Shown: positions 40,688 to 61,399, numbered from the whole stretch's first letter. The stretch: 63,596 bases of DNA, filler included, from Octopus bimaculoides (GCF_001194135.2; 4 parts of 3 records of this genome joined end to end with filler, not necessarily neighbours in it); one strand, 5' to 3'. A program made the numbers and translations. Notes: generated from the sequence alone by a model not told the origin.

Positions 40688-40895
40688 AGAAAAATTTGTA
40701 GTTTGGAATCAGTAGTTCTTTGACTGCTATTTCTAAATTTTCAGTATGTTGGAGAAGCAACTCAATTGCTAATCCCTGTATATTTATAATGATAAATAGT
40801 TTTACCGATAAAGGTTTTTTTTCATACTGAACTACTTGGCAGAATTGTTAATTATTAATTCTATTATTAATTGACGATTCTCTGCCCTTATTCTT

Positions 40896-40931
<36 letters not shown>

Positions 40932-41724
40932 CATTACACAGGTATATATATCATTACACAGGTATACAAAAAGAATACACAGACCTAAAAATAGATGCAT
41001 TTATATATTTTTCTATGTATATATGAGTATATGTGTGTATACACACGAATATATAAATATATATGTATGTATATACAGATATACCGGAGTCTGCATAAGT
41101 GTGCATGTGTGTGCATGATTGTGTGTGTTTTTGAACGTGTGTGCATGATTGTGTGTGTTTTTGAATGTGTGTTTATTCATGCAAATTTATATTTAGTCAA
41201 TTTTGTTTCATATATATACCCGTATGTACTTGTGAGTTGAGAATGCTTACGTAAAGTTGAAATGATTCTTCTAATTTAATCATTACCGACATTATTAATA
41301 CAGATGCATACAGAGAATATTTCTTCTAGTAATGTATGAAACACAGCAACTGCTGATTTAACGACCACTTATACGTTTTTTTTCGTATACTAAACTAAAA
41401 AGTAACAGATGCCAGTAATATCTCAATAAAGCATACATGTTTTGTACTTGTAATGTTCTAATGTATTTTGCTGAAATGCTGCACATATTTACGATGATAT
41501 TACTGACCATGCGTTCAAAGGTTTCTATATCCTTGCCAATGGGTTTCAAAGAAGCAGTGGTGGTGTGCTTGTTTTTGTTGGTTGATTTCATGCTAACAAT
41601 ATAACAATTTTGAAATCAATGATACATGAAAATAGAATTGTCTTCACGTAATATAAAAGCGCACAATCAAAGCTGTTTTGTATTTAGATAAGCTCGTTAT
41701 TGTTTCCCGATATTCCAAACATGC

Positions 41725-41765
<41 letters not shown>

Positions 41766-42971: not shown

Positions 42972-43200
42972 ATTTGCTGGCGCCACAAAGTAAACAGCAG
43001 AAATATAACGCCACAGACAGCAGATGAAAATAGAGAAGCAACAGCAGCGACACAGAAAAACAAACAGCAAAGAAAAAAAGCAAAAAAGACACAACGAAAA
43101 GAGACCACGAATACGAGTAGAAGGGAAAAAGATGAACGCGTCATTATTTGCGACGAAATAAATAACGTGCGTGGCCAAAATGGCGTCACATATCACAAAA
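42972..43200 (-). promoter_or_regulatory. Probable promoter/non-coding first exon of the ZMYM-like gene
   Basis: CpG-rich patch with a YY1-type motif CAAAATGGCG at 43176-43185, a pyrimidine-rich leader on the - strand and a donor AAT|gttagt at 42972/42971. Linkage to ZMYM is inference. Confidence 0.5.
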
Positions 43201-43922
43201 CAATTATGACATCTGCAGAAGTTGCAGCAGCCCCAGTAGTAGGATCAACGTCTTAAAATCTTAGTAGTGCATTTTCATAACAAAGATCAATCAGGTTCTC
43301 CATGACATTCTCCATTCCTTTCTCTCTCCCCATCTCTTTTTTTCCCGTAACATTCATTAAGCATAGAACTATATTTTCCCAACTTCTCTGGTCACCACTC
43401 CCGTTCTCACAGCACATCACTCAGTGAGGTCGACTCTAGAAGTATTCCTTACTACAAAGCAATGAAGACAGAACAAGAGATCAATGTCTGCAACACGCAA
43501 GCATAAAAAAAAATGTGATTTTGAAATAATATTATTCGAAGAACCTCATGAAATAGAAGTGAATAGCTACAAAGATGGTGGGATTCAGGAGTCAGATTTC
43601 CAACCCTCTGTTCAGAAATCCTTCTAATCCTTCTGTTCAGAAGCCCTTCTAATCAAAAGAAAATAACGAAGAAGTGTACGTAGACTTGACACGAGTATTC
43701 ACAAATACCCACGAGCAACCTTCATATTCATTGAATCCCTTCCCGTTGATGAAAGTGAATTTGAAGTTCTTACCAAACAACGAAGTACGTGACGTCTCTA
43801 TAATTATCCATGAGGTTCTTTCGAAATAGAGTTTCTTGTTTAACATCTCATGCAATTTGGTTAAATATACTATAGCCTCACGAAGACCAGTTGCCTCTGC
43901 TCTCTGATCTTCATATTCATAC

Positions 43923-43960
<38 letters not shown>

Positions 43961-45090
43961 GGCTGTGAGATAACATTTTACTCAAAATACCGGCACTCAG
44001 CTTCCGTCAATACATTTTCCCAACTTGTGCGTGAGTTCTTCGCTCTGTCTTCGAATGTCTTAGAACACCCTGATCTTTGCTTTCGGCTTAGACTTAGTGT
44101 TATAGTCAGAGCGGTTAGTACCTTTCTCAACCGTTCTCTGCATACAAGAATTTATGGGCTTACAATCCAGGAATTAAGAGACCAAAAGTTAGGGGCTGGT
44201 GAAGTTGTAGTAATGATCTCCAATGCCGTTGACTGTTCACTAGTTATCGGGATGTTCCTTAAAAACGGAAAGCCGTCAAATTTAACTCGAACGCTATGTA
44301 TAAGAAAGCGTGTGCATGTGCGATTGTGTTATAAAGACTGAAAGAGAGACTGGAGCTTAAAGTAACTGATTTAAATCTTAAATATAAGGAAGGTAGAAAC
44401 TGCTGCAATCGGAAACATTTTAAATTTTAGTTTTCAAAAACAGAATTGTTATTGGTAGGGTGGAGTAGAGAATGAATAGACAGATGGCAGTCTTTGTTAA
44501 GGAAACGTTAAGTGTAATATGATGAAAATGTATGCATCTGAAGCTGTCTCTAAAGTTTCATGGGGTTTACGTTTTGTAGAACATTTAGTTTAACATAAGC
44601 GATGGGGTGAACACAGAAGAGCGATAATCTAAACAATAGCGTAACAATCCATTATCTATTGGTTCCGGCAGATTCGGATGTGAACGTCTGACCTCTATTT
44701 ATATTTTTTGTTTCGTCATCGGAGAACTCCTCAGTATTTCATTTGTTCATGACATGCGTCATAACAAATGAATTCACTGGCAATATGTTTGATTGTAAAA
44801 ATCTATGCTCTTCTTGCTATAATGATAAAATTATCGTTAAAACTTTATTACCGCATTGTTGACACTATGTTGAATTCCCGTGATATTGTTATGTTGCTGT
44901 ATTAGTCTTATCTCAGTTTTACTGCCTAAAATCTTTATTTAATATGAGTGTATTATTGAAAAGGGAGAGTTAATAAAGTGAATGAGAAAGTATTGTGCAA
45001 ATGGTAAAATGGCTTTATGTCTATGAAAATTGTCATTTAAAATATAGCCTTATGAGTTGACTTACACCAAATATAAACTTATGGTTTTCA

Positions 45091-45200
45091 TCATACCAAG
45101 ATGAAGAATAAAGCTACCATAAGCATGCAGAGGGAGAAGTTAATGTTGGGCGACGCGACGCCTTTCCCGAAAGTATGCGGTTTTAATGTAGGGTCATTCC
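45091..45200 (-). CDS. Six-Cys family paralog A, terminal exon with GPI-signal-like tail (WNDPTLKPHTFGKGVASPNINFSLCMLMVALFFILV*)
   Basis: atttatttcag acceptor, phase 1 in frame with exon 3. Small-residue cluster then hydrophobic C-terminus; AATAAA on the - strand at 44934-44939. Confidence 0.85.
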
Positions 45201-45429
45201 CTGAAATAAATATGAAAGATCGGTAAAAATCTATTGAAACTCTTACTACAGATAGTAGAGATATAGATGCAAATTTTATGCATCGCATACTCGTGAATAA
45301 ACTAGACACTCGAGTATATTCTTCAGAACTGCTCCAATTAAACTTGTCATATGGATTTTAATTTTCTTGGAGACCATTTTGAAGCTTCAAGAAAATACAT
45401 AATTTGTCTATTTTAACGCTGGAATAGAC

Positions 45430-45850
45430 ATTAGAATTCTATTGGTGCTACCTATATAACTCAATCGTTCTGCCTACAACAATCTATGCCAGCTAGACGT
45501 GCAAGAAAACAATAAGGTCGGATAGGAAATTAAATATACTCCACCAAATGTGTCTCAGACAGAACCTGAACTTCAAATGTTTGATTAATATCACAAATGA
45601 GGAGATTTCGAGAAGAATAAGGTCACAACCGCTGCAAAGTTTTGTAGCTGAGAGTCGATTCTGCATCGCTGGCGTCATTCTCCCTCTAGTCAATCATTGG
45701 AGGTCGAAAACAGCCTGTCACCAGGCGTAAAATAGCTATGCGAAAGATCACTTGCTGAAGGTCATTTCATGATGAATTCGTGACATTTCGTGGAATGAAT
45801 AATATGGTAATCTAGTATCCGATCGAATCTGGGGGAAGGAGATTTTCGTG
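45430..45850 (+). mobile_element. Old RTE LINE fragment in the last intron of paralog A
   Basis: CLRQNLNFKCLINITNEEISRRIRSQPLQSFVAESRFCIAG resembles CLRRIL.I.W...ITNEE..RR....RRLRFAGH. Confidence 0.6.
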
Positions 45851-46366
45851 AAATGCGCCCAGCGGTACAGGAAAACCTGGAGCTACGAGAAATACAACTA
45901 TTTAAACAAATCTTGAATTTTCTAAATAGTCAAATTTACATAACGTAAAAGTATTCAAAAATTATTTAACATAATTTATTTTAAAATAACATTAACCCTT
46001 TAGCATTTAAACTATCCGCATCTGGCTAAAATATTCTACCTGTTTTATGCGCAAACTGGTCACCTCTGGCCTCTAATACCTACCCACCAACATAATTTTA
46101 AAAATAAAGAACCACACCATCAAAATCGCATACCAACGTGATAATGCATGGTTAATTAAAAACAAAGTAAATAAATAAATCAGCTTTACATTTGGCAGTG
46201 TATTGCTAACCCAAGCCAAACGTCAAGGATTTCTTTTGAAATATTAAATTAATTTTAATATATGTTCAACGCTTATTAAATTGCGTCCGACAAAATAATT
46301 TTACAGAATTCGATAACGCTTTTAATGTAGTGTGTTATTACATAATTTACTACAAGCAAGACTTAC

Positions 46367-46455
46367 AAGCACACGTTTCGTGAAAAACGGTATGGAAGTG
46401 GAGACTACACTGCATAAATTTGTTCCGAAAACACATTTCAAATAACTTCGCGCGC
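46367..46455 (-). CDS. Six-Cys family paralog A, exon 3 (RAKLFEMCFRNKFMQCSLHFHTVFHETCA)
   Basis: ttctttttcag acceptor, T|gtaagt donor; 89 nt, phase 2->1, same length and phase as in paralogs B and C. Confidence 0.9.
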
Positions 46456-46916
46456 CTGAAAAAGAAAATATTTTTTCAGATATATTATTATGGAAAATTG
46501 AAATTTCCATAGTTGAAAATAGTTTAAAATATTTATGTTTTGATATCTAAGCAACTTTGTGAGGACAATAACTGACGGCTTTTACAATGATTAGATTTTA
46601 GGAGCAAACCTTTAAAATTGTGATGATAATTTGCCCAAAGAAGAAGTAATAAGCATAGCATCTCCAATGTGGTCCTAATTAAAAGGCAGATATTATTCAT
46701 TTTGATCATCTTTAAGGCCATACCATGGAATATTTTACCTATTCTTTGTCCGATAACATGTTCAGCAGTTCAAATCTGGCGGTTACTTTTAACAACAATT
46801 CAAATGTCTAGTACATGCGAAATATTATGAGACAGAAATAGTAGCACTGAATAGCTGATAATATTTATAAATTAGATATGTCAATAACAGAAGCAAAAGT
46901 AGAAGCGTCTATGTAC

Positions 46917-47016
46917 TTGCACGAAGAAGGATCATTTTTCTGTTCGGGATATTTTTTAAAGACTTGCGGGCACAGAAGTTTAGCAGTTTCGTAGCAAAAT
47001 TCTGAGGCTGTTAAAC
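46917..47016 (-). CDS. Six-Cys family paralog A, exon 2 (GLTASEFCYETAKLLCPQVFKKYPEQKNDPSSCK)
   Basis: gaattccag acceptor, AA|gtacat donor, phase 1->2; homologous to paralog B and C exon 2. Confidence 0.88.
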
Positions 47017-47894
47017 CTGGAATTCGATTAAAACAAAACCGGTTAATTCAATATATATCAAACACAGACTCACACTCATATATATACATACATACATNNN
47101 NNNNNNNTATATATGTATGTATATATATATATACTTGTACATCCATATACATGAACATATGTATGTATACACACACACACACACACATACACAGATATAT
47201 ATATACATTGCATTTAACTTATTTCTGTATTTCCATTTCAGTTCGTAATCTTATTTTATTCTATAAGACTGAAAAGTGACTCTTAATAGGACCAAAATTT
47301 GCTTCGTAGGCATAACATTTATCGCTACGTACTCTTTTCAAGAGAGCGCTTGTGGATACAAATAACAGACTGTAGGTACAGAGTTAGTACAATGATTTAA
47401 GAAATGTACATCAAATCAGTTGACCTGTTAAGAAGATCAATAAGTGTACTCTGTATATATAAAGGAGGATAGAAACATAGACAAAAATTTCTACAGACAA
47501 TAATCATTGAAAGAGGATGCCAGTAATTGCCAAGCAATAGCTTCTCAAACTTTACTCAACAGATTCTGAATCGAGATGTAGTAGACGTCAACAACAGAGT
47601 ATGAGATATTAAAGATGACACGGATATCCAAGAATTGATTTTTAAAGAGAAATAACCATAAATCTTAACTAACTTAATTACATTAAAATTTATTTGTAAA
47701 TATCTTCCGTTAGTTGTATATTTTCATTTCTTATATTTCCTGCGACACAAATCCAATTCTTTAATACGTCGTTTACCAACAACATTTGTGGTATATAGAG
47801 TAAAGTAATTGTTATTGGAGTCGAAAATAAGATGAGTCGCGAGTTTTCTTCCTGCATTCAGCACCCTACATTCGATACTTTACTATATAGACAG

Positions 47895-47927
<33 letters not shown>

Positions 47928-48675
47928 NNNNNNNNNNNNNNNNNNNNNNNNNNNNNNNNNNNNNNNNNNNNNNNNNNNNNNNNNNNNNNNNNNNNNNNNN
48001 NNNNNNNNNNNNNNNNNNNNNNNNNNNNNNNNNNNNNNNNNNNNNNNNNNNNNNNNNNNNNNNNNNNNNNNNNNNNNNNNNNNNNNNNNNNNNNNNNNNN
48101 NNNNNNNNNNNNNNNNNNNNNNNNNNNNNNNNNNNNNNNNNNNNNNNNNNNNNNNNNNNNNNNNNNNNNNNNNNNNNNNNNNNNNNNNNNNNNNNNNNNN
48201 NNNNNNNNNNNNNNNNNNNNNNNNNNNNNNNNNNNNNNNNNNNNNNNNNNNNNNNNNNNNNNNNNNNNNNNNNNNNNNNNNNNNNNNNNNNNNNNNNNNN
48301 NNNNNNNNNNNNNNNNNNNNNNNNNNNNNNNNNNNNNNNNNNNNNNNNNNNNNNNNNNNNNNNNNNNNNNNNNNNNNNNNNNNNNNNNNNNNNNNNNNNN
48401 NNNNNNNNNNNNNNNNNNNNNNNNNNNNNNNNNNNNNNNNNNNNNNNNNNNNNNNNNNNNNNNNNNNNNNNNNNNNNNNNNNNNNNNNNNNNNNNNNNNN
48501 NNNNNNNNNNNNNNNNNNNNNNNNNNNNNNNNNNNNNNNNNNNNNNNNNNNNNNNNNNNNNNNNNNNNNNNNNNNNNNNNNNNNNNNNNNNNNNNNNNNN
48601 NNNNNNNNNNNNNNNNNNNNNNNNNNNNNNNNNNNNNNNNNNNNNNNNNNNNNNNNNNNNNNNNNNNNNNNNNNN

Positions 48676-48723
<48 letters not shown>

Positions 48724-49194
48724 ATATTAGCCTAAGTACCAAGCGTGCTTGATTATGAAAAATGTTAAAGGAAATAAATATATTTATTCTGATAAAAGAG
48801 ATATTTCCAGAAATATTCTATCAGATGACATGAGTGTAAACAAAGTTATTAAAACGAATTCCGAAATCAATCAAAGCTTAATTTTGTAGAACGTCTCTAA
48901 ATATACAATGGTTTCAGCGTGTCCTTTAATTGGGGTACGAAGAAAACGAGTGTTTGGACTTCCAACTCGCGAATATCCTACATATAGTTGCCCACGACAG
49001 AAAGGGGGAGCAAGGTTAAGTCAAGCAACGTCGAGATATTGTGTTTGAGATTTATTTATGGACATAGCAAGACTTACATTATTTACATTTGACGGATATT
49101 TGTACTCATCGTGTTTGTTGTGGTAGCTTTTAATACTTATATTGCTTAGAAAATTATTTTGAATAAGGCATCCAATGAAATAAAACAAACAAGA

Positions 49195-49655
49195 GTTCCA
49201 CTGCGACGTTTTGAAGCGATTGAGGGACGACATTCGGCGAAAGTGACCAGATGAGTGGAGTGCGAATAATTGGACTCTTCGCGATGACAATGTTCTCCTC
49301 ACTTGTGTGTTCTCTACCCAAAACAACAGGCTCTCACTTCCGTTCCAACCCTATTTGCCAGTTGTAACATCTGTAGATTTCTATTTCTTCCCCCAAGAAA
49401 ACACAGCGCAAAGGTCACCGTTTTAAAACCGTTGTCGAGGTCCAGAGCGAATCATAGAAAGATCTCGACTGGCTTACGATAAACGACTTCCAGACCGAAA
49501 TTTAAAAGTGGCAGAAACGCTAGGACCGATGTATTGCTGCGCTAGGTGACGATTTTGAAGTATATGATGTTAAAACGTGGGTAAACAAGTTATATATTTT
49601 ATTAGACATAACTCGTCCGGGAGCCTTTTCATACCATCTTGTATATGAGCAAAAC
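49195..49655 (+). mobile_element. Decayed mariner transposase C-terminus with 3' terminus
   Basis: LKRLRDDIRRK*PDEW...W...DN...QPY.P...DFYFFP...KGHRF...KWQKR*DRCIAALGDDFE (degenerate HPPYSPDLAPCDF region), ending ...cataccatcttg|TA. Confidence 0.75.
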
Positions 49656-50977
49656 TCTCCTTTCACAAATCTGAAAATAATTTCCAGATAACTTTTTTCT
49701 GTGTGTTTAGAACAAAGAAAAAAAAAAATTCGTTTACATCTTGGGAAATAGCAACCGACAATTTTATGGCGTTGTTCATTTGAAAGTTTCGAAAAGATTC
49801 CGCATAAATATCTCGAGATTGTTTCTTTCTTTTTGACTGAATCGCAACACGTCATCTCACAAAATACAACCGTTTCTACAAATACCGAAATAGGTTCGAA
49901 GTTTTGATGCTTAACTCTCCATATTCACAGGAAAGATAAATGGGATTTCAATGAGCTATAGATTCCTATCAATCCATTGACGCAATTATATACGTCAAAT
50001 TTTCTCTACAGCAATTAGATTCGTACACAAATGGTCCATTCATAAACAAACATCATTGGATCACATGTTAGCAAGCCTATTACAAGTGACATTTGTAACA
50101 ATATAAAAAGTGAAATCAGTGCATCAAAGGATTCAACGAATATGCGTTTATACACTTTTATAGATTTATTCTAATGCAAATGCTTCAGCATCATATCTCT
50201 CAGGCAAATGCATGTTTTCCCTAATATTAGAAATTGAAAATACATTTACCACTCTTTCCAAGCAACGAAAACCAGATAAGGCAATGTTGTCACAGCAAAT
50301 CAAAATCCACCGAAACATTAAGTTTATTATTCACAAGAAACTCATGCTAGAGATTACTATGTACCATTCAGTTAGGAAATAAATTAAATTTGATATTCGA
50401 AACACGTCATAATTGTTCTATTATTTATTATTCATCTCCTTATGCGTAGAAAGCTTATATAATCAGCTGCAGTCCCATGAATCTTTATGGGTATTGCTGG
50501 TCATTCAAGCGCCATGCATGTGAGAAACTGAGTTCAAATTAAGTTTATAAATTCATGTTTTTTTGGCTGAAGAATTATTTGCCCCGGCGCAAAAAATAAA
50601 AAGTAGGCAATACGTAAATATTAAGGAATGTACAACAAACAAAATGTTTCGAGAATGTTTTATTATAGTCCATCGTATTGCGATAGCTTTTTATCGCTTT
50701 TGTAAAAAGGTAATTTTTTTCCGACGCAAATATTAAATCATTAAAATATTTATTGTTACTTAAAATATTTTAAAGCACATATAAATTATTAAAACATATT
50801 TCGATATATTAGATATATCGTTAGACTGTCACTGTAACGAAGCAAATTACATATATTACGAAATATAACTTACGATCGTGAAACGGAAGCACCTGTTACA
50901 ATAATTGTATTAATTAAAGGAAATGAATGTTTGGAACACAGTATGAGCAAACGTTGTATCTAACACTGATAGCCACG

Positions 50978-51014
50978 ATGAAATGTCGTCTAGGTATATT
51001 TCTTCTCATCGCTG
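50978..51014 (+). CDS. Six-Cys family paralog B, exon 1: signal peptide MKCRLGIFLLIA(G)
   Basis: gccacgATG context, G|gtaagt donor, phase 1. Spliced to exon 2 it gives MKCRLGIFLLIAGVDA-VTQFC with a V-x-A cleavage motif. Confidence 0.85.
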
Positions 51015-51807
51015 GTAAGTAATTACACGATAATGTATTAATTATTCCCGATTGTATCAATTCACTGTATCTACATGATTGATACACTGTTATAGGGATA
51101 AGATTTTTAAACCCCAAGTAAGATAAATTTAATCATTGTTTGTTAAGAGTGGGTTTGAATTTCTTAATAAAGTCCTTTTCTTTGCGTTTTCTCTCTTATC
51201 CCTATAACTAAAACACAAAAAATATCTCAAATGTCATCATTTCTAAAATAAACTTGGCATCATTTCTAAAAATAGCCAAACACCTACTGCTGCTGTCAAA
51301 AGGAATACGTATAAAAGACAAAAAAAAAAGAAAAAAAACAGCCAGTCTGTTTCAGTCTGTTACACTCTGTCAGACGAGGCCTCATGAATGCCAATAGACA
51401 TGAAAATACGTATTAGCCTTTAGATATTTAATTCTCTATATTGAATACTCAATATTTCATATATTCAATAAGACATTCAATACTTCATTTCATTTTACCA
51501 TTTATTTTATTTTATATTATGTATTATATATTCCATATTCTATATCCCACATTAATTTTACAAGAATATAAATAAAAAACAGACAGAGTTGGAACTCTTT
51601 TAAATAAAATAATATATTCTTCTATACACGATCATACAAAACNNNNNNNNNNNNNNNNNNNNNNNNNNNNNNNNNNNNNNNNNNNNNNNNNNNNNNNNNN
51701 NNNNNNNNNNNNNNNNNNNNNNNNNNNNNNNNNNNNNNNNNNNNNNNNNNNNNNNNNNNNNNNNNNNNNNNNNNNNNNNNNNNNNNNNNNNNNNNNNNNN
51801 NNNNNNN

Positions 51808-51845
<38 letters not shown>

Positions 51846-51888
51846 CTTGAAGACGCCTGGCTCTTTTATACGAATTTTAATTTTGCAG

Positions 51889-51991
51889 GTGTTGATGCAG
51901 TGACCCAGTTTTGTAGGGACACAGTCAATGATCTTTGCCCTGACATCTTTAGAATATATCCTAAATCTCAACCAGATAGGAACTATTGCAA
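51889..51991 (+). CDS. Six-Cys family paralog B, exon 2 (GVDAVTQFCRDTVNDLCPDIFRIYPKSQPDRNYCK)
   Basis: ttaattttgcag acceptor, AA|gtataa donor, phase 1->2. Confidence 0.9.
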
Positions 51992-52324
51992 GTATAAAAT
52001 CTCTTATAAATTCTCTTTATGATATTTATTGCTTATAATATTTGCATGTTTATTCAAAGAGACGGTGATAAAATCGATATCGCCTTTTATTTTCCAATAT
52101 TTCTAAGACCGACTTTACAACGCAAATACTTCTGTAGAATGAATTTAATTAAAGAAACCCGCTACATAATTAAAGATATACGATTTCAAACTAAGAAAAT
52201 GCAGCAGAGAATGATGGAAATAATGGAAATGAAGTACGAAATTATAAAGCAGAGCACAATCATCGGTTGTTAACGAAAAGGGTGGCGTTTTATTGATACT
52301 AATAAATATTATTTGCTATTTTAT

Positions 52325-52633
52325 TATCTATGCGCCCTTTTAAAAGCCCAGCCAGGCTCATGGGCACGGCTACCCGGTTTCTATGGCGTGTGTGCCCCCC
52401 ACCAGCTAGACGGGACGCCAGTCCATCGCAGCTTTACTCAAGAAACAGGAAGAAAGAGTGAGAGAAAGTTGGGGTGAATGAGTACAACAGGGGTCACCAC
52501 CACCCCTGCCGAAGCCTCGTGGAGCTTTAGTTGTTTTCGTTCAATAAACGCACGCAAAGCCCGATCTGGGAATCGAAACCGCGATCCTCCGACCGCGAGT
52601 CCGCTGCCCTAACCACTGGGTGATTGCGCCTCA
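52325..52633 (-). mobile_element. tRNA-Arg-like-headed SINE
   Basis: Head gaggcgcaatcacccagtggttagggcagcggactcgcggtcggaggatcgcggtttcgattcccag; second copy at ~10594-10785. Confidence 0.75.
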
Positions 52634-53257
52634 AATATTGTTTACTATCATAACTGATTTCTGATTAGGTATAATTAGGATTAGACAGGACGTTGACCAA
52701 ATATAACTATATATGAGTAGACTCAAGGCACAAAACTTAGCAGTTTGTCTTATTGGGCTCACGATCGTAGGATCGCGTGTTCAATTCCCGGCAACTCGAT
52801 GTGTTTCGATCAAAACGCTGTATTTCACATTTCTCTAGTTCATTCAGCATCTAATTAAATGGGCCAGCCTTGTTACATTTCGTGTAACCCTGAAGCTCCA
52901 TGAAAACTATGTCAGTTGTACATCAGTCTGTGGTGGACTCAAAAACTTGCACGTTAATTTTACGCGCAAGCTGTTTTACAGGTCGGATTATCTGGAACAC
53001 TTATCGTCGTAACCGACGGATTTTCAGTTTTAATATGGGCAGATGCTATTCTGTTAATTCCAGAGGAGAATTCCAGTTACACTTCAAAAGGATTTATCCA
53101 CACATGCACACAATATAAATATTGCCTAATATTCCAAAGTCCTGTTTATTTTACCATCTCCTGTTCTATTAAATTGCAGTGTACAAATAATTTAAAATAT
53201 TGACAATATCTTTGATTATTGTCTTTTGAAATGACAATCTCACATTTAATTTTTTAG

Positions 53258-53346
53258 GCGCGTTAAACTAATTGTGAAATGTTATGCAACAATCTTTGAG
53301 ACGTGTGGGGTTGAATTCAAAATAGAGTATATCGTTAAATGCAATA
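53258..53346 (+). CDS. Six-Cys family paralog B, exon 3 (RVKLIVKCYATIFETCGVEFKIEYIVKCN)
   Basis: aattttttag acceptor, A|gtaagt donor; 89 nt, phase 2->1. Confidence 0.9.
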
Positions 53347-53521
53347 GTAAGTATATGCTCTTTATGTTTTAGACAGTGGAAGAACGATAAAGTCCTATAG
53401 ATCTTAAAGAAAATGTAATGTGAGAATCGGCGTCTAAAAATACTAAAGTTGTTGTTTAATAGGAAATTATGAATTATGAATTGTTAATGCAAATGTCACT
53501 AAACTGTATGTATATATATGT

Positions 53522-53569
<48 letters not shown>

Positions 53570-54251
53570 NNNNNNNNNNNNNNNNNNNNNNNNNNNNNNN
53601 NNNNNNNNNNNNNNNNNNNNNNNNNNNNNNNNNNNNNNNNNNNNNNNNNNNNNNNNNNNNNNNNNNNNNNNNNNNNNNNNNNNNNNNNNNNNNNNNNNNN
53701 NNNNNNNNNNNNNNNNNNNNNNNNNNNNNNNNNNNNNNNNNNNNNNNNNNNNNNNNNNNNNNNNNNNNNNNNNNNNNNNNNNNNNNNNNNNNNNNNNNNN
53801 NNNNNNNNNNNNNNNNNNNNNNNNNNNNNNNNNNNNNNNNNNNNNNNNNNNNNNNNNNNNNNNNNNNNNNNNNNNNNNNNNNNNNNNNNNNNNNNNNNNN
53901 NNNNNNNNNNNNNNNNNNNNNNNNNNNNNNNNNNNNNNNNNNNNNNNNNNNNNNNNNNNNNNNNNNNNNNNNNNNNNNNNNNNNNNNNNNNNNNNNNNNN
54001 NNNNNNNNNNNNNNNNNNNNNNNNNNNNNNNNNNNNNNNNNNNNNNNNNNNNNNNNNNNNNNNNNNNNNNNNNNNNNNNNNNNNNNNNNNNNNNNNNNNN
54101 NNNNNNNNNNNNNNNNNNNNNNNNNNNNNNNNNNNNNNNNNNNNNNNNNNNNNNNNNNNNNNNNNNNNNNNNNNNNNNNNNNNNNNNNNNNNNNNNNNAT
54201 CATTATGAAAGTAATAGTAGTAATGATGATGATAACAACAACAACAATGGC

Positions 54252-54348
<97 letters not shown>

Positions 54349-54349
54349 A

Positions 54350-54600
54350 TAAATGCCCTGATGCAGTACGAGGCAGTGGCTGTCATGGCTTCTGATCTTA
54401 ATTGATTGGAAGTGTTATCATGTACATTGTTTTGTCTTGATATAAAGGATGGGCTACACCAAATATTCTGTTCAATACCACAGATTTGCTTGTCAGTCGT
54501 TTGACCTTAACCAGTTGAGCATGACCCTTGGGAACCGACGATATGTGCATCTCTGATCATGAGCAGAAGTAGTGGGGGAGCATCATAGCCATGTGTTTTA
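54350..54600 (-). mobile_element. Dispersed SINE-like repeat tail with (att)/(aat)n
   Basis: aaatgccctgatgcagtac...ttgatcggaag-like body abutting a long microsatellite; family recognised from memory. Confidence 0.5.
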
Positions 54601-54876
54601 CTCATCATCATAGTCATGTGTTTTGTGAATCTGTTTCAGATATATGAACTACATAACACTACTGAATTCCGGATCTGAAGAACTTTCACCGGATGTAATC
54701 ATATGGATGACTTCCTGTTGGTAAATTAGAAAATAACACCCTCTCCGAAATAAGCAGCTGAACCCGAAACTCTAGATCCGCATTCAGTCAGCCTTATTAT
54801 GTCGTTCCAGACATAAACCTCATTCCCCCGTTTGCTCTTGTTTGTTTTTCTGTTTTCCATTTCCTTTCGTTTTCAG

Positions 54877-54932
54877 GTGTATTTGAAATTTTCATATCTA
54901 CCTTTGTCTGGTGTTTCCTCTTATGCCATTAA
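54877..54932 (+). CDS. Paralog B candidate short terminal exon (SVFEIFISTFVWCFLLCH*)
   Basis: tttcgttttcag acceptor; in frame at phase 1; hydrophobic tail then TAA. Confidence 0.45.
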
Positions 54933-55231
54933 CCTGTCTAAGCTTATATATCCCACGTAAGCATAATCGGAAGACTGTGCCAAAGCACCACTTGTTTTAT
55001 GAAAATGCTCTCATCACATCAATATATGAAAAGTATATACTGTGTTTATTAAATTATATTTATCTCTCACCAGATGAAGTATCTTTGAGTTGGTTATACC
55101 TTCACGGAACAGTATACCACACGCACACACACACACACAAACACATATTAGAATTGGCTGTAACAAACCGTATAAATTTTATCTTCACGATATTCATACC
55201 AAATTATTTGCTCCAAATATTTCTTTTCCAG

Positions 55232-55384
55232 GCAAGTCATATCAAGAGATTCCGAGATCAATAATACTTCGATATAAATTGACAACCACTACTGCAACTC
55301 CTCAACAGACCCGAACTACGGCCATCACAACAACTAGAACTTTAATTCATAAAGCCATCAGAACTACGATTCCGCCTGTTAAGA
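55232..55384 (+). CDS. Paralog B candidate Thr-rich stalk exon (SKSYQEIPRSIILRYKLTTTTATPQQTRTTAITTTRTLIHKAIRTTIPPVK)
   Basis: tttcttttccag acceptor, A|gtaagc donor; 153 nt, phase 1->1, open, mucin-like composition. The following exon was not identified and may lie in the gap 55564-56020. Confidence 0.7.
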
Positions 55385-55529
55385 GTAAGCGATGGGGCTG
55401 CATAGGATATGTGTGGTACCTTGTATATTCATCTTGTATTAAAGGATATGACATACATAGACACTCTAAGTAACATGAAACTATTTAATAAGCTGCGAAT
55501 ATACATACATACAAATATACATACATATA

Positions 55530-55562
<33 letters not shown>

Positions 55563-56914
55563 TNNNNNNNNNNNNNNNNNNNNNNNNNNNNNNNNNNNNN
55601 NNNNNNNNNNNNNNNNNNNNNNNNNNNNNNNNNNNNNNNNNNNNNNNNNNNNNNNNNNNNNNNNNNNNNNNNNNNNNNNNNNNNNNNNNNNNNNNNNNNN
55701 NNNNNNNNNNNNNNNNNNNNNNNNNNNNNNNNNNNNNNNNNNNNNNNNNNNNNNNNNNNNNNNNNNNNNNNNNNNNNNNNNNNNNNNNNNNNNNNNNNNN
55801 NNNNNNNNNNNNNNNNNNNNNNNNNNNNNNNNNNNNNNNNNNNNNNNNNNNNNNNNNNNNNNNNNNNNNNNNNNNNNNNNNNNNNNNNNNNNNNNNNNNN
55901 NNNNNNNNNNNNNNNNNNNNNNNNNNNNNNNNNNNNNNNNNNNNNNNNNNNNNNNNNNNNNNNNNNNNNNNNNNNNNNNNNNNNNNNNNNNNNNNNNNNN
56001 NNNNNNNNNNNNNNNNNNNNNAATCACAGACATAATTTTCGTGGTATAACTCTTTATCTCGATAGATATATTCAATTTTGTCCCAGGAATCATATTACAT
56101 GGTTTGCAACCTGCAAAGAAAAAACAAAAAAAAAAAAGAAGACTATCTCGGTTTTTTTTTTTTCTGTCTGAAAGATTCTGAATGCGAATTCGTGCATTGC
56201 ACTGGAAAAGACTTTAAATAATAACAAATGCACAGAATCAATTCAACTTCTTCCGATCGTTTGTTTTATGCGATTGTTAAAGCCTCAATCGCTTACTTTT
56301 AGGAAACGTTCTATTGTCACTGTTCGGGACCTTTTCAGTGACTTAGAGAATTCGTCTCGCGCTCCAAGGTCTGGAACTTATTGCATCTGTGCATGTGTTA
56401 TTATTATTATTGGGGTAATAAATTTCCAAAGATAAGACAATATGTTTATAAAATTAAGTTCGTCATTAGCGTCTTTTTTTTCTTTTTGAGTTCCAAATTC
56501 ATAATAAAAGTTTAGAGATTTGGTAATGCAAGACCCATAACATTAATGACATCGTTGATATTACATTGGTATATTCGTAGTCATTACCTATATAATATAC
56601 TGTAAATATACGCAATGATAATAGAGCTGCAATGCTAATATGACATGATTATTGCAATATCAAAATCTTTACTCGGTGTTTTATTACTATTAAAAGATTT
56701 TAATCGTTGATATTATATTTCTATATCAGTATACCTCTAATTCAAATAAAAACAATTCAGTTACATTCTATACCGAATATGCTTTACATAATTATTAAAT
56801 AGTTTTATTTTTTACATTGCCATTTCTGTAGAAATGCTTAATGCACCACAGATACTTGCTGTTGTTTCAGATGATCTACTTTTCTTGGTCTGTGAGACAG
56901 CATAATTTTATATA

Positions 56915-56954
<40 letters not shown>

Positions 56955-57326
56955 TTCTATGAATATCAGTGACACTGATGTTGCAAATAGGTAATAAGTT
57001 ACTTCCCTAACGATTATCCTGCAATTCCATATATCTTATAAATTCGGCCTTTGTGTAGTTACCGGATGCCTCCGGCTTATGAGTTGCAGTAGACTGAAAT
57101 GAAACGATATGAGAGCTCGGGAGTTCATAACATAAAATTATTGCCTGTATGTTACGATCTATGCCCCCTGTTCCTGTTCCTCAACGCAGTGTACGTTGTT
57201 CTAACAAGATATCCACTTTAATTCGCCTATAAAATTGGCTTCTGGTGCAAATACAGCTTCATTGGCTATTAATGAATTAAAAAAAGTTTATATCTTTACC
57301 AGTTGAATTTTTGGCTTTTGATCCCA

Positions 57327-57429
57327 TTACACCAAGTTTAATATCATAAGTATTCGTAGTATTAAAAGTGATGTCGTAACACACGTTGACGTTCCACTCT
57401 TCGTTTTGTTTTGGGTTTCGTTGTCGTAG
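57327..57429 (-). CDS. Paralog C terminal exon with GPI-signal-like tail (YDNETQNKTKSGTSTCVTTSLLILRILMILNLV*)
   Basis: tatattccag acceptor. The hydrophobic-tail frame needs phase-2 entry (see finding on the microexon); it contains two N-glycosylation sequons. Confidence 0.6.
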
Positions 57430-57850
57430 CTGGAATATATATATATATGAAGAAAACGGTTTTTAATGAGGCCTAGTTTATTCCACTAAGGATTAATTTA
57501 ATCCTAGATATTGATTTCAAATTTTGGAACCGGACCAGCAATTTCGGGAAGGGAACGCCAGTGCTCAACTGGTATTTATTTTATCGACCAAAATGGTTGA
57601 GAATATCTCGGTGGGATTTGAGCATAGAACGTTACAACGGACGGAATGCTGCTAAATAGTTTACCATTCGTGCTAATGAATCTGCCAGCTAGCACCTTCC
57701 TTTTCAGTCAAAGCATCACATGCTTAATATGAAATCAAAATGTAAATTGGCAAAGGTAGTTGCCATTTAGAATATCATTTCATACCCATCACCTTCTGCA
57801 ATATGTTTAAAAGCATAGTTTAAAAACATAACACTAAAAACGTAGCTTAC

Positions 57851-57939
57851 CAACGCAGTTCATCATATATCTATACTTGAAGAAATTATAACATTGCGGA
57901 TTTAAGAATTTCAAACATTGCTTAAGCTTCTTCAAACGA
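57851..57939 (-). CDS. Six-Cys family paralog C, exon 3 (RLKKLKQCLKFLNPQCYNFFKYRYMMNCV)
   Basis: ccttttttccag acceptor, G|gtaagc donor; 89 nt, phase 2->1. Confidence 0.9.
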
Positions 57940-58934
57940 CTGGAAAAAAGGAAAGTTCCAAAACGAAAAATATTAATGTTAATTAAAATTATTAACGAAA
58001 AATATTAATTAAAAATATTAATCTATCCAACTATTTATCCGTCTGTCACTTTGCCAGTTCATCTATCTATCTATCTGTCTCCCTGTCTCCTTGTCTATTT
58101 GTCTGTCTACCTATCTACCTATCTGTCTATTTATCTATGTATCTACCTTTCCTTCCCCCTCTCTCTCTCTCTTTCTATATATGTGTGTGTGAGAGAGAGA
58201 GTATTTGTGTGTATAATATATATACATATGTATACACACACAAACATACACACACCTTCACACATACGCACACACAGACATAGATAAACATGTATAAATG
58301 AGGAATATAAGTGAAGTTTAGAAATTTACAACAGCATAGCAAGTGTGAATCAATTTTCTCTTATATCCTATATCTAAAATCATCCGATGAAAGCTGATGA
58401 TTCTAGTAATGTAATGATAGTAATTGCACAGTTCATCAAAAATAAATCAATGCTGCTGTAACAGCTGTTATAGACTATTAAACCCCACTGTTTATCTTCA
58501 TTTATACAAACGCCATACCTAGAACCATCTATATGCTGAAGCTATAACTTGCATCAGATCGTGTTTGTATACGTGTTTGTATATATATATGTTCGTATAT
58601 ATGCGCGAATATAAATATATGTATGCGCATCACACATCAGCATACGTGTGAGACTCCACCTTCCCTCTGCTTCTTGAATGTTACGATACCTACAATACTT
58701 AACAAATGATATTCAACCGTTTGATATATTTTCTGGCGTCATGGCCAACTGGAAACGGTGTTTCCTAGGGCTAAATAGCAGTAGCATTCTTCCCTTTCAT
58801 GGGACTGCCACATTAAGTTGGCAACATACCATCACTTTATCGTCCCTCTACTGTATAAATCTCATATATATATATGTGTGTGTGTGTATACATATATATA
58901 TATATATGTATATACATATATATATATGTATATA

Positions 58935-58967
<33 letters not shown>

Positions 58968-59819
58968 NNNNNNNNNNNNNNNNNNNNNNNNNNNNNNNNN
59001 NNNNNNNNNNNNNNNNNNNNNNNNNNNNNNNNNNNNNNNNNNNNNNNNNNNNNNNNNNNNNNNNNNNNNNNNNNNNNNNNNNNNNNNNNNNNNNNNNNNN
59101 NNNNNNNNNNNNNNNNNNNNNNNNNNNNNNNNNNNNNNNNNNNNNNNNNNNNNNNNNNNNNNNNNNNNNNNNNNNNNNNNNNNNNNNNNNNNNNNNNNNN
59201 NNNNNNNNNNNNNNNNNNNNNNNNNNNNNNNNNNNNNNNNNNNNNNNNNNNNNNNNNNNNNNNNNNNNNNNATATCTGTATATGTATATATATACACACA
59301 TGCTGGGCGGCCCAAAATTAGGTTTACAGTTATTCAACTATCTCTTTCGCATTCATATATTAATGGTCTAGATTTTAATTATAAAATAAATATGGAACCA
59401 TTATTCTATGCTAATTAGGTTAATTTTGACAAGCTCCCTCTTTAATTTTGGAAGACAGAAATTTAAATGTAATAAAATGTTTTAAAAAAATTTAAAGTGC
59501 TTTTGTGAAAACTGTAAACCTACTTTTAAGCCATCTTGTATATATATATATATGTATATATATACGTGTGCGTGTGCCTCTGTGTGTGTGTGTGTGTGTT
59601 TGCGTGCTTGTGCATGCTTGTGCACATATTAGCATTCGAATCTATTTACAACAACTGAAGCTGAAGGAACACTGCTGTCAAAAATGCTTGACTGTATCAT
59701 AGATTACGGAACCACAGACATCTGTACGCAGCCATGCCAGCGACTCTACTTAAAATCAATAAGTGCATTCTTCACACAGCAAAAACAATTAGATGTAATA
59801 AGGAAAGTGTTGTATATAC

Positions 59820-59916
59820 TCGCAGTATTTAGCTGCATTACTGAAAGGATATTTTTTCACCGCTACGCTGCAGTATTTTATGGCTGAATCAACGCACAAG
59901 TCTGCTACCGCCAAAC
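59820..59916 (-). CDS. Six-Cys family paralog C, exon 2 (GLAVADLCVDSAIKYCSVAVKKYPFSNAAKYCD)
   Basis: gtatttatag acceptor, GA|gtatat donor, phase 1->2; C-x7-C-x15-C with KKYP shared with paralog A. Confidence 0.87.
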
Positions 59917-61399
59917 CTATAAATACAAGCAAATTTATTTGTAATTCTTCAATATCCAAAATTATAAATGATTTTAGTTCTCTCATTCGATTAGACTATT
60001 TTAAATTTGATGATGGCTATAATTTTTTTAATAGTTATGATATTTCCATCTGCTTCAGCGAAGAGTACTTCGATAAACTGACGTGTTTCATCAATAATGA
60101 CATTTACAACGATATGATGTATCTAATTTATGTTGACATATTTACTCCTTCACCAAGTCCAATGATTGTATATATTGTTAAACAGTGAGTGTGTGTGTGT
60201 GTGTATACATATATATGTATATGTATGAATGCATGTACATATATATNNNNNNNNNNNNNNNNNNNNNNNNNNNNNNNNNNNNNNNNNNNNTTAATTAATT
60301 AANNNNNNNNNNNNNNNNNNNNNNNNNNNNNNNNNNNNNNNNNNNNAACTGTTTTGCTATTTCTCGAGTAATTTGTTTCGGATTTTCCTCCTTTATAGTC
60401 TTCAGAAGCTCATAGTTTATAAAACTTGGTCGTGTAGATCGAGGGGAATCTGTGAGAGAAAAGTTTTTTGAGCGAATCCGGTCATGTCCGGGCTCTTAAA
60501 GCTTCATTTCCACAGACAGAGCGAAATATTTTTTGCCGCTTCCATTGCTGAAGAGTTCGTTTTCTAATCCACACAACATGCAATGTCTGATATGGGTTTT
60601 ATCTAAACTCATTTTAAAAGAGTAAAATCAATACGAAGTTAACATCTATGGCATAAAGTAATCTGCAAAGAAAGGAGAAAAGAAACACATTAGGCTTATT
60701 TTACCATAAGTGATCATGTCAAATATGTGACAAGGCTTTCATTTCCAATCTAACACAGGCGCGCGCGCACGCACATTGGTTTCAAACGCCCTCTTCCGAA
60801 ATTGCTGGCACAGAACCAAAGACGAGCTGAATCGTCGGACTATGACTATATACAAATAGTGCGAACATGAGCCCAGGAACTGGAGGTACAGGAGAGGGGA
60901 ATTTGCACCCACTAATTTTTTTTTGTTTGCGGGCGAGGGAGGTACAAAATCAAAATCTGTATCCTCTTACCTTTCTCAGTCTTGGGAAATTATGTTTAAA
61001 AATTGATCTGCAAAAATGTTGCTTGAATTTTCTGTTTGTTCTCAAAACAAGAACAAAGAGCTAAAATAAAAAGAAAACCAAAATATCCCCAAAATTAAAA
61101 GAACATATATATATTACAAGAACAGCCATGGTCATTCCTCAATACTAGCACAGTTGATGACCTATTAAACTTCATAATCAAGAACCCTTCACAGTCCAGA
61201 TATCCTCATTTCCTCTGAATACCACAACTAAACAACAACAATAGCTACAGTCACTCCTCAATACTAACACAATTGATGACCTATTAAACAACACAGCCCC
61301 TAGCTTCTCCTTTCAGTGAAGTTACTCAAATTCTTCTCAGAATAACACATAAGATCCATCATCACTATTGTCATCTTATTCTACTACTACTGCTGTTAT

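What the first reader, a model, noticed from the sequence alone, without database searches (positions are those of the whole stretch)
45091..59916. Cluster of three paralogous genes for an unrecognised secreted/GPI-anchored six-cysteine protein family
Seen: three exon sets with the same architecture: exon 2 phase 1->2 ending just after Cys3, and exon 3 always 89 nt, phase 2->1. Cys spacing is C-x7-C-x16-C-x8-C-x7-C-x11-C in A and B, with x15 in C. Domains: A FCYETAKLLCPQVFKKYPEQKNDPSSCKRAKLFEMCFRNKFMQCSLHFHTVFHETCA; B FCRDTVNDLCPDIFRIYPKSQPDRNYCKRVKLIVKCYATIFETCGVEFKIEYIVKCN; C LCVDSAIKYCSVAVKKYPFSNAAKYCDRLKKLKQCLKFLNPQCYNFFKYRYMMNCV. A and B share 20/57 residues by hand count. B has a signal-peptide exon; A and C have GPI-like tails. 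Orientation is -,+,-. None of the genes appears as a complete ORF in the track. Inference: a lineage-restricted, fast-evolving cell-surface family (recognition, chemosensory/skin/sucker, immune or neural).
Basis: partly seen in the sequence, partly recalled or inferred. Interest (0 to 1): 0.88.

Follow-up and report, generated by a model that had tools for sequence, protein, structure and literature searches.

The report
Octopus gene cluster: small RGM-N-like surface proteins
The window holds three real neighbouring genes (two missing from the public annotation) of an octopus-only family of small secreted, mostly lipid-anchored six-cysteine helical proteins, and their domain looks like a distant relative of the BMP-binding head of repulsive guidance molecules.

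Summary
The piece is Octopus bimaculoides chromosome CM046618.1. It holds three diverged paralogues (A -, B +, C -). Each has a 97-103-nt exon carrying Cys1-3 (phase 1 to 2) and an 89-nt exon carrying Cys4-6 (phase 2 to 1), all with AG/GT splice sites. No exon touches an assembly gap.

- **Annotation:** B is RefSeq XP_052830431.1 ('uncharacterized protein LOC128249895'). A and C are not annotated.
- **Family:** An exhaustive profile search found about 23 relatives, all in the genus Octopus. Some have a signal peptide, one domain and a GPI-like tail. Others have 2-9 tandem domains. A paralogue 0.42 Mb away has the same exon plan.
- **Link to a known domain:** The family is not fully orphan. 16 of 30 family domains hit Pfam RGM_N (best E 1.3e-4). 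Two multi-domain members pass its cut-off. The only PDB sequence hits are RGMB N-domains. hhalign gives P 2e-4, with 0 of 300 column shuffles reaching the score.
- **Limits of that link:** The three window domains do not hit Pfam themselves. Foldseek finds no RGM match. Only one of four BMP-contact residues is kept.

Best reading: membrane-tethered, stand-alone RGM-N-like binding modules. Their ligand is unproven; BMP/GDF-type ligands are suggested by analogy only. C's GPI tail is reachable only through a weak acceptor.

The parts
46917..47016 (-). Gene A exon 2 (100 nt, phase 1 to 2). It encodes xLTASEFCYETAKLLCPQVFKKYPEQKNDPSSCK, carrying Cys1-3.
   Evidence: Exact peptide match. Acceptor ttccag and donor GTACAT. 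It is 82 nt from the 10-N gap at 47098 and does not touch it.
46367..46455 (-). Gene A exon 3 (89 nt, phase 2 to 1). It encodes RAKLFEMCFRNKFMQCSLHFHTVFHETCA, carrying Cys4-6.
   Evidence: Acceptor tttttcag and donor GTAAGT.
45091..45200 (-). Gene A exon 4, including the stop codon. It encodes WNDPTLKPHTFGKGVASPNINFSLCMLMVALFFILV*, a GPI-attachment-signal-like tail.
   Evidence: A strong acceptor (tttcatatttatttcAG) is in the required phase. The tail resembles those of paralogues P0009, P0013, P0015, P0016 and P0020. GPI anchoring itself is inferred.
50927..51014 (+). Gene B exon 1. The RefSeq ATG is at 50927. The family-typical start MKCRLGIFLLIA is at 50978. It encodes the signal peptide and ends in phase 1 with donor GTAAGT.
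   Evidence: It matches XP_052830431.1 (P0003).
51889..51991 (+). Gene B exon 2 (103 nt). It encodes GVDAVTQFCRDTVNDLCPDIFRIYPKSQPDRNYCK.
53258..53346 (+). Gene B exon 3 (89 nt). It encodes RVKLIVKCYATIFETCGVEFKIEYIVKCN.
55232..55473 (+). Gene B exon 4 as in RefSeq. It encodes a Thr-rich stalk, a hydrophobic segment (WGCIGYVWYLVYSSCI), a short polar end and the stop codon.
   Evidence: The protein P0003 maps exactly onto it. The preceding intron holds the gap at 53570-54198.
59820..59916 (-). Gene C exon 2 (97 nt). It encodes xLAVADLCVDSAIKYCSVAVKKYPFSNAAKYCD.
   Evidence: It lies on a different contig from exon 3 (gap at 58968-59271 in the intron).
57851..57939 (-). Gene C exon 3 (89 nt). It encodes RLKKLKQCLKFLNPQCYNFFKYRYMMNCV.
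57327..57472 (-). Gene C candidate exon 4. From the weak acceptor at 57472 it gives ...SGTSTCVTTSLLILRILMILNLV*, a GPI-like tail. From the strong acceptor at 57429 the frame gives ATTTKPKTKRRVERQRVLRHHF*, with its stop at 57364-57362.
   Evidence: Which acceptor is used cannot be decided without RNA data.

Best explanation
**What it is.** The three exon sets are three members of an Octopus-restricted multigene family arrayed along one chromosome. B is LOC128249895. A and C are unannotated.

**Gene plan.** Each gene has four coding exons:
1. A short exon for the signal peptide.
2. An exon carrying Cys1-3.
3. An 89-nt exon carrying Cys4-6. Exons 2 and 3 together encode a domain of about 60 residues with six cysteines, predicted to be a compact helical bundle held by three disulfides.
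4. A last exon for a short Ser/Thr-rich stalk and, in most members, a hydrophobic GPI-attachment-type signal.

**Relationship.** The domain is most likely a distant relative of the N-terminal domain of repulsive guidance molecules (RGM_N). That domain is a three-helix, three-disulfide module through which the GPI-anchored RGMs grip the finger region of BMP/GDF ligands.

**Proposed mechanism.** The proteins are exported, disulfide-locked and tethered to the outer membrane leaflet. The multi-domain relatives are instead released. There they act as small ligand-binding modules, either co-receptors or decoys. BMP/GDF-type cystine-knot ligands are the leading candidates, by analogy only.

**Shown versus inferred.**
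- Shown: the genes, exon structure, family membership and restriction to Octopus.
- Supported statistically: remote similarity to RGM_N.
- Inferred: disulfide pattern, GPI anchoring, ligand and function.

**My estimates.** Genes and family 0.95. RGM_N homology about 0.6. BMP/GDF-type ligand binding about 0.25. The overall confidence of 0.6 refers to the statement up to and including the RGM_N kinship.
For: **Genes and family**
- The exons, phases and splice sites are verified.
- B is identical to XP_052830431.1 on CM046618.1.
- The exhaustive HMM search gives 27 hits, about 23 of them true. All those checked are Octopus.
- An HMM built without A, B and C scores them at 49-67 bits.
- Paralogue P0021, 0.42 Mb away, has the same four-exon plan, phases 1/2/1 and an 89-nt exon 3.
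- About 10 relatives end in GPI-signal-like tails.
- AlphaFold2 models of B and A have pLDDT 90 and are all-helical.

**RGM_N link**
- PF06535 scores 37.9 bits for P0004 and 29.1 bits for P0005, against a cut-off of 24.2.
- 16 of 30 single domains hit RGM_N at E<=10, while no other family recurs.
- 8 of 10 single domains tested have E from 1e-4 to 4e-2, all in one register.
- The family profile against the PDB returns only RGMB N-domains, at E 0.07-0.8.
- hhalign against 94 RGM N-domains gives P 2.3e-4 and score 22.4. Column shuffles give 9.3+/-2.1, with a maximum of 18.4 in 300.
- The two share the motif D-x2-[FY]-C-x2-L-x2-[YF]-x2-C-x7-C.
- Phe at Cys5+4 aligns with RGMB Leu103, the residue that inserts into the ligand pocket (PMC7354924).
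- RGM_ND is a three-helix bundle with three disulfides, and it binds BMP2/GDF5 (PMC7354924).
Against: **Against the RGM_N link**
- The three window domains give no Pfam hit even at E<=10.
- No single domain reaches the RGM_N cut-off. The best is 22.5 bits against 24.2.
- The two proteins that pass do so by adding up repeated, non-independent domains.
- hhalign probability is only 31-45%.
- Foldseek of both models against the PDB finds no RGM and nothing significant.
- RGM Cys1 and Cys6 have no positional equivalents, so the disulfide pattern must differ in part.
- RGMB Arg100, Gly101 and His106, which contact BMP/GDF, are not conserved.

**Against the gene models or function**
- There are no expression, GPI or binding data here.
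- A and C are absent from RefSeq.
- C's GPI frame needs a weak acceptor.
- B's annotated tail is not GPI-like.
Confidence: 0.6

Rival explanations
1. This is an orphan family with no true kinship to RGM_N. It is a cephalopod-born disulfide-locked helical domain. Its C-x8-C-x7-C core and flanking hydrophobics resemble RGM_N (and neuritin) through convergence or chance. It would then have another role, such as cell-cell recognition, a neuritin-like trophic signal, or a carrier or accessory in chemotactile tissue.
For: - There are no Pfam hits for the window domains.
- Foldseek finds nothing.
- hhalign probability is below 50%.
- Most BMP-contact residues are not kept (against PMC7354924).
- Neuritin shares the architecture of signal peptide, 6-Cys domain and GPI anchor. 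It also shares 'YP ... C-x8-C-x7-C' in register.
Against: - RGM_N is the only Pfam family that recurs, in 16 of 30 domains and in one register.
- The only PDB hits are RGMB.
- 0 of 300 column shuffles reach the real hhalign score.
- Neuritin gives hhalign P 0.15 and no PF15056 hit.
Confidence: 0.3
2. Only B is a working gene. A and/or C are decaying duplicates (unprocessed pseudogenes) that still show open domain exons.
For: - A and C are not called in the RefSeq or GenBank annotation of the same sequence.
- No exon 1 is found for A in readable sequence.
- C has lost the conserved 'PD' of the loop and one loop residue.
- C's strong last-exon acceptor is 1 nt out of frame with the GPI-like ORF.
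Against: - Both domain exons are open, with P about 0.02 per gene by chance.
- All six Cys, the YP motif and the invariant Arg are kept.
- All splice sites are canonical.
- A's tail exon is in phase with a strong acceptor.
- The missing first exons coincide with assembly gaps. These are 47928-48675 for A and a 2.9-kb gap just beyond 60246 for C. That alone would stop an automated model.
- A good exon-1 candidate for C lies beyond that gap.
Confidence: 0.25
3. The exon sets are chance open frames with coincidental cysteines, and not genes.
For: None beyond the weak pairwise exon-3 E-values of 0.09-0.2.
Against: - B is a RefSeq protein.
- The family HMM scores are 49-67 bits.
- Exon lengths, phases and splice sites are identical, and a distant paralogue shares them.
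Confidence: 0.01

Closest known systems
RGM N-terminal domain (Pfam PF06535; RGMA/RGMB/hemojuvelin, PDB 4UHY/4UHZ/4UI1)
   Same: - It is a helical bundle of 60-70 residues with six cysteines (three disulfides in RGM).
- It shares the core D-x2-[FY]-C-x2-L-x2-[YF]-x2-C-x7-C, with Cys3-5 in the same register.
- A hydrophobic residue sits at Cys5+4, the position of RGMB Leu103.
- The host proteins are GPI-anchored and extracellular.
- The sequence match is statistically reproducible but weak.
   Different: - The octopus domain stands alone or in tandem arrays of 2-9, with no RGM_C/vWD domain and no GDPH autocleavage site.
- The positions of the first and last Cys differ: C-x7-C against C-x4-C at the start, and x11 against x21 at the end.
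- It has its own 'YP-x3-PD' loop.
- The RG(D/N) loop and His106 are not conserved.
- No single domain reaches the Pfam cut-off.
- Foldseek finds no match.
[quoted passage not shown]
Neuritin / CPG15 (Pfam PF15056)
   Same: It has the same overall architecture: signal peptide, one small six-Cys helical domain and a GPI anchor. It also has 'YP' before Cys3 and C-x8-C-x7-C.
   Different: There is no PF15056 hit for any member. hhalign gives P 0.15, which is not significant. Its loops are longer, and it is a vertebrate family.
GDNF/GAS1 domain (GFR-alpha, GAS1; PF02351)
   Same: It is a Cys-rich all-helical extracellular domain of GPI-anchored co-receptors. UniProt auto-names one paralogue (P0010, A0A0L8GPX5) 'GDNF/GAS1 domain-containing protein'.
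   Different: That domain has ten cysteines. There is no PF02351 hit in any scan. No GFR-alpha or GAS1 chain appears in the PDB searches. The label could not be reproduced here.

Membership tests
Octopus six-Cys helical family (RefSeq 'uncharacterized protein LOC1282497xx-98xx'; unnamed) | Six Cys with spacing C-x7-C-x15/16-C-x8-C-x7/8-C-x11-C, a YP motif, and an invariant Arg two residues after Cys3 | tested here: met
   Alignment of 30 domains. A, B and C keep all of these.
Octopus six-Cys helical family (RefSeq 'uncharacterized protein LOC1282497xx-98xx'; unnamed) | Significant score against a family profile built without the window's own sequences | tested here: met
Octopus six-Cys helical family (RefSeq 'uncharacterized protein LOC1282497xx-98xx'; unnamed) | Four-exon plan with intron phases 1/2/1 and an 89-nt exon 3 | tested here: met
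   A, B and C. The RefSeq models of B and of the distant paralogue P0021 show the same plan.
Octopus six-Cys helical family (RefSeq 'uncharacterized protein LOC1282497xx-98xx'; unnamed) | N-terminal signal peptide and a C-terminal GPI-type hydrophobic signal | tested here: inconclusive
   Signal peptide:
- B has one.
- A's exon 1 was not found.
- C's candidate lies outside the window.

Tail:
- A's is GPI-like.
- B's RefSeq tail is not.
- C's is GPI-like only through a weak acceptor.

These judgements rest on heuristics only. No SignalP or GPI predictor was available.
RGM_N domain (PF06535) | Score at or above the Pfam gathering cut-off (24.2 bits) | tested here: not met
   - The window domains A, B and C give no hit at E<=10.
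- The best single family domain scores 22.5 bits, E 1.3e-4.
- Only the multi-domain relatives P0004 (37.9 bits) and P0005 (29.1 bits) pass, by summed repeats.
RGM_N domain (PF06535) | Profile-level sequence similarity beyond composition, in a consistent register | tested here: met
   - 16 of 30 domains hit RGM_N, and no other family recurs.
- In the Pfam matches Cys1 and Cys5 fall on profile positions 6 and 46, which are RGM Cys2 and Cys5. hhalign aligns Cys3-5 with RGM Cys3-5.
- The only PDB hits are RGMB.
- hhalign gives P 2.3e-4, with 0 of 300 column shuffles reaching the score.
RGM_N domain (PF06535) | Three-helix bundle with three disulfides, superposable on solved RGM_ND | tested here: inconclusive
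   - The AF2 models are helical bundles with six Cys and pLDDT 90.
- Foldseek against the PDB lists no RGM chain and nothing significant.
RGM_N domain (PF06535) | BMP/GDF-contact residues (RGMB Arg100, Gly101, Leu103, His106) | tested here: not met
   Only the Leu103 position is kept as a hydrophobic residue, Phe in A, B and C. The other three vary (alignment against PMC7354924).
RGM proteins proper (RGMA/B/C, DRAG-1) | C-terminal RGM_C/partial vWD domain with the GDPH autocleavage site | tested here: not met
   The proteins are about 100-175 aa, or are pure arrays of the small domain. No member gives a PF06534 hit, whereas true RGMs carry PF06535 and PF06534 together.
Neuritin (PF15056) | Match to the NRN1 profile or sequence | tested here: not met
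   No PF15056 hit. hhalign gives P 0.15. The control neuritin sequence scores 134 bits.
GDNF/GAS1 domain (PF02351) | Match to the GDNF-receptor domain profile, or to solved GFR-alpha or GAS1 chains | tested here: not met
   No PF02351 hit. No PDB hit. The only pointer is a UniProt automatic name for P0010. The SMART model could not be run.

The most novel reading that the evidence does not exclude
Octopuses have taken the ligand-gripping head of RGM, a domain said not to occur outside RGM proteins. They have turned it into a free-standing, GPI-anchored or tandemly repeated module and expanded it into a rapidly diverging gene array of at least a dozen loci. This would give a lineage-specific set of cell-surface co-receptors or decoys that tune BMP/GDF-type or other cystine-knot signals, or that have been re-used for cell recognition in the nervous system or suckers.
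Probability: 0.2. Interest if true: 0.75.

Novelty: new variant of a known kind. Interest (0 to 1): 0.55.

Why it matters
- **Annotation.** Two of the three genes are missing from the reference annotation, probably because their first exons fall in assembly gaps. The whole family is labelled only 'uncharacterized'.
- **Domain evolution.** If the RGM_N kinship holds, this is the first case of that domain outside RGM proteins. It would be a clear example of domain liberation followed by lineage-specific expansion in a cephalopod, alongside the known protocadherin and zinc-finger expansions.
- **Testability.** It gives concrete questions to test. Do these small GPI proteins bind octopus BMP/GDF ligands or neogenin? 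Where are they expressed?
- **If the kinship fails.** The family would still be a well-defined octopus-restricted surface-protein family with a confidently predicted new small fold.

Tried and rejected
- **Word-indexed homologue searches.** The search with the three domains found nothing. The search with the 30-domain alignment found only P0021. The index is too sparse for 60-aa queries, so the exhaustive HMM search was needed.
- **Pfam on the window domains.** No hit.
- **Foldseek against the PDB.** Tried with two AF2 models. It returned only non-significant TPR-like helical matches.
- **Neuritin idea, from memory.** The alignment is in register but not significant.
- **GDNF/GAS1 label.** Not reproducible.
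- **Closing the gaps.** The public chromosome assembly has identical N runs.
- **Exon 1 of A.** The search found only microsatellite-coded junk and a weak 9-residue candidate at 50092-50065, with a poor donor and a Cys junction codon.
- **First C tail candidates.** The candidates at 56599 and 56626 were dropped in favour of the ORF ending at 57327, whose tail matches paralogue tails.
- **Rfam.** Nothing.
- **Other ORFs in the piece.** The longest ones have no Pfam family.
- **Literature.** Searches found no paper on the family. The 2015 octopus genome paper is not held.
- **Not attempted.** dN/dS between paralogues, because about 30% identity means saturated synonymous sites.

Full report
**Source and gaps**

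The piece 40688-60246 has 33% G+C and is rich in microsatellites. Gene B's product is identical to XP_052830431.1, 'uncharacterized protein LOC128249895 [Octopus bimaculoides]'.

The locus fetched for that protein is L001, from CM046618.1 in GCA_001194135.2, range 49,515,733-49,540,279. It is 100% identical to window 40927-60246 and has the same N runs. The gaps therefore cannot be closed with public sequence.

- Every gap is flanked by (AT)n or (AC)n repeats.
- Every gap lies in an intron or between genes.
- No coding exon abuts a gap, so no reading frame depends on a gap length.
- A exons 2-4, B exons 2-3 and C exons 3-4 each lie on one ungapped contig.
- Exon order and orientation across the gapped introns agree with the conserved gene plan.

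**Observation**

All six peptide blocks are present exactly. Every internal exon has AG/GT.

| Feature | A | B | C |
|---|---|---|---|
| Strand | - | + | - |
| Exon 2 length (phase 1 to 2, ends 2 nt after the Cys3 codon) | 100 nt | 103 nt | 97 nt |
| Exon 3 length (phase 2 to 1) | 89 nt | 89 nt | 89 nt |

- The Cys spacing and the count of 20 identities in 57 between A and B are correct.
- Only three copies of each exon type exist in the piece.
- Pairwise exon-level E-values are strong for A2/B2 (about 1e-6) and weak for the other pairs.
- A family HMM built without A, B and C scores the spliced domains at 66.7, 54.1 and 49.0 bits.
- With a stop-codon frequency of 0.059, 63 codons stay open by chance with P about 0.02.
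- The paralogues share no intron similarity. Only SINE-like repeats match elsewhere, so the duplications are old.

**Gene models**

*Gene B.*
- Exon 1 runs from 50927 to 51014. The family-type start MKCRLGIFLLIA is at 50978, and the donor is GTAAGT.
- Exon 2 is 51889-51991 and exon 3 is 53258-53346.
- Exon 4 is 55232-55473. It encodes a Thr-rich stalk, a hydrophobic segment and a polar end, so the tail is not GPI-like.

*Gene A.*
- Exon 2 is 47016-46917 and exon 3 is 46455-46367.
- Exon 4 is 45200-45091. It has a strong acceptor and encodes ...GKGVASPNINFSLCMLMVALFFILV*, which resembles the tails of P0009, P0013, P0015, P0016 and P0020.
- No credible exon 1 is found in readable sequence. It probably lies in the gap at 47928-48675.

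*Gene C.*
- Exon 2 is 59916-59820 and exon 3 is 57939-57851.
- The GPI-like ORF (...TTSLLILRILMILNLV*, stop at 57329-57327) is in phase only from a weak acceptor at 57472.
- The strong acceptor, ttccag followed by position 57429, gives ATTTKPKTKRRVERQRVLRHHF*.
- A family-typical exon 1 (MKYILAVSFLFV followed by GTAAGT) lies outside the window, beyond a 2.9-kb gap, at L001 23127-23091.

A and C are not among the genes called on this sequence.

**The family**

An exhaustive profile search of 1.84 billion representatives gave 27 hits at E<=1e-3. About 23 are true, and P0024-26 are repeat artefacts. All those looked up are O. bimaculoides, O. vulgaris or O. sinensis, and all are 'uncharacterized' or 'hypothetical'.

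Two groups appear:
- Proteins of 92-125 aa with a signal peptide, one domain and usually a GPI-like tail, together with 2-4-domain versions. These are on the same 55.5-Mb chromosome as the window (LOC128249786-789, -851-853, -882/883, -887, -895).
- Arrays of 6-9 domains without a tail, on a 117-Mb chromosome (LOC128248155, LOC106874482).

P0021 (LOC128249882) lies 0.42 Mb from B, next to another member. It has the same four exons, phases and 89-nt exon 3. Invariant columns are Cys1-5 and one Arg. The Pro of YP is kept in at least 90% of domains. Cys6, the Tyr of YP, the Asp of the 'PD' loop and Phe at Cys5+4 are kept in at least 70%.

**Relation to known families**

*RGM_N (PF06535).*
- Pfam gives nothing for the window domains.
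- P0004 scores 37.9 bits and P0005 29.1 bits against a cut-off of 24.2. These scores add up repeated domains.
- 16 of 30 single domains hit RGM_N, while no other family recurs.
- Eight of ten tested singly score 14.7-22.5 bits (E 1e-4 to 4e-2) in one register. Octopus Cys1 aligns with RGM Cys2. Cys5 aligns with RGM Cys5, and hhalign also aligns Cys3 and Cys4 with RGM Cys3 and Cys4.
- The family profile against all PDB sequences returns only RGMB N-domains, at E 0.07-0.8.
- hhalign against RGMA and RGMB gives P 5e-4.
- hhalign against 94 vertebrate RGM N-domains gives score 22.4, P 2.3e-4 and probability 45%. Column-shuffled controls give 9.3+/-2.1 with a maximum of 18.4 in 300, and the reversed alignment gives 13.7.
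- The shared core is D-x2-[FY]-C-x2-L-x2-[YF]-x2-C-x7-C.

*Structure.*
- RGM_ND is a three-helix, three-disulfide bundle that binds the BMP2/GDF5 finger region. Its key contacts are Arg100, Gly101, Leu103 and His106 (PMC7354924).
- In the alignment only Leu103 has a conserved counterpart, which is Phe.
- AF2 models of B and A are confident (pLDDT 90) helical bundles.
- Foldseek finds no RGM and nothing significant. For a 60-residue helical domain this is weak negative evidence.

*Other candidates.*
- Neuritin has the same architecture, but hhalign gives P 0.15 and there is no PF15056 hit.
- The GDNF/GAS1 domain is a UniProt automatic name for P0010. It gives no Pfam or PDB support.
- Neither is supported.

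**Mechanism**

- Shown: these are secretory-pathway genes encoding one small Cys-locked helical domain, and many relatives have GPI-type ends.
- Inferred: three disulfides, GPI anchoring, and a role as a tethered ligand-binding module.
- By analogy with RGM_ND, the ligand could be a BMP/GDF-type dimer. The loss of three of four contact residues makes this uncertain, and I put it at about 0.25.

**Rivals**

- A convergent orphan family with another ligand (0.3).
- A and/or C being pseudogenes (0.25). This is compatible with the main reading.
- Chance ORFs, which are excluded.

**Novelty**

No paper on this family was found. [quoted passage not shown] I therefore rate this as a new variant of a known kind. 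It is a stand-alone or tandem RGM-N-like module expanded in Octopus, with two unannotated members in this window.

Noticed in passing
L001 23091-23127 (minus strand; about 3.8 kb beyond the window's right edge, past a 2.9-kb N gap): A short ORF, MKYILAVSFLFV, is followed by a perfect phase-1 donor, G|GTAAGT. This is the same pattern as B's exon 1 and the family consensus. It is probably exon 1 of gene C, or of a further paralogue.
   Followed up: partly
window 54877-54932 (+): An alternative last exon for B sits behind a very strong acceptor (cctttcgttttcAG). It is in the right phase and encodes SVFEIFISTFVWCFLLCH*. This short hydrophobic tail is like that of paralogue P0007. RefSeq uses 55232 instead.
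   Followed up: no
window 57429 vs 57472 (-): In gene C the strong acceptor is 1 nt out of frame with the GPI-like tail ORF. An (AT)n run lies just upstream of it. The cause could be a real frameshift, an assembly error or use of the weak acceptor.
   Followed up: partly
window 52441-52632, 52857-53020 and 54415-54597: Interspersed SINE-like repeats of about 160-190 bp lie inside B's introns. They are 74-89% identical to copies in locus L002, 0.42 Mb away. They account for the local G+C peak at 52188-52687.
   Followed up: partly
window 47098-47107, 47928-48675, 51643-51807, 53570-54198, 55564-56021, 58968-59271: Every assembly gap is bordered by a dinucleotide microsatellite, (AT)n or (AC)n. 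An (AAT)22/(ATT)11 run follows the gap that ends at 54198. This suggests assembly breaks at simple repeats and not mis-joins.
   Followed up: yes
proteins P0023 and P0002 (public gene models, not in the window): Some public models of the family look mis-joined. P0023 carries an exon-3-type half-domain before an exon-2-type half-domain. P0002 fuses domains with unrelated repeated sequence. Family annotation is therefore unreliable in general.
   Followed up: no
L002 3770-3940 and 11623-13817: Two further family genes lie side by side 0.42 Mb from the window. One has a 150-aa product and the other is P0021. The array therefore spans at least 0.4 Mb of this chromosome.
   Followed up: partly
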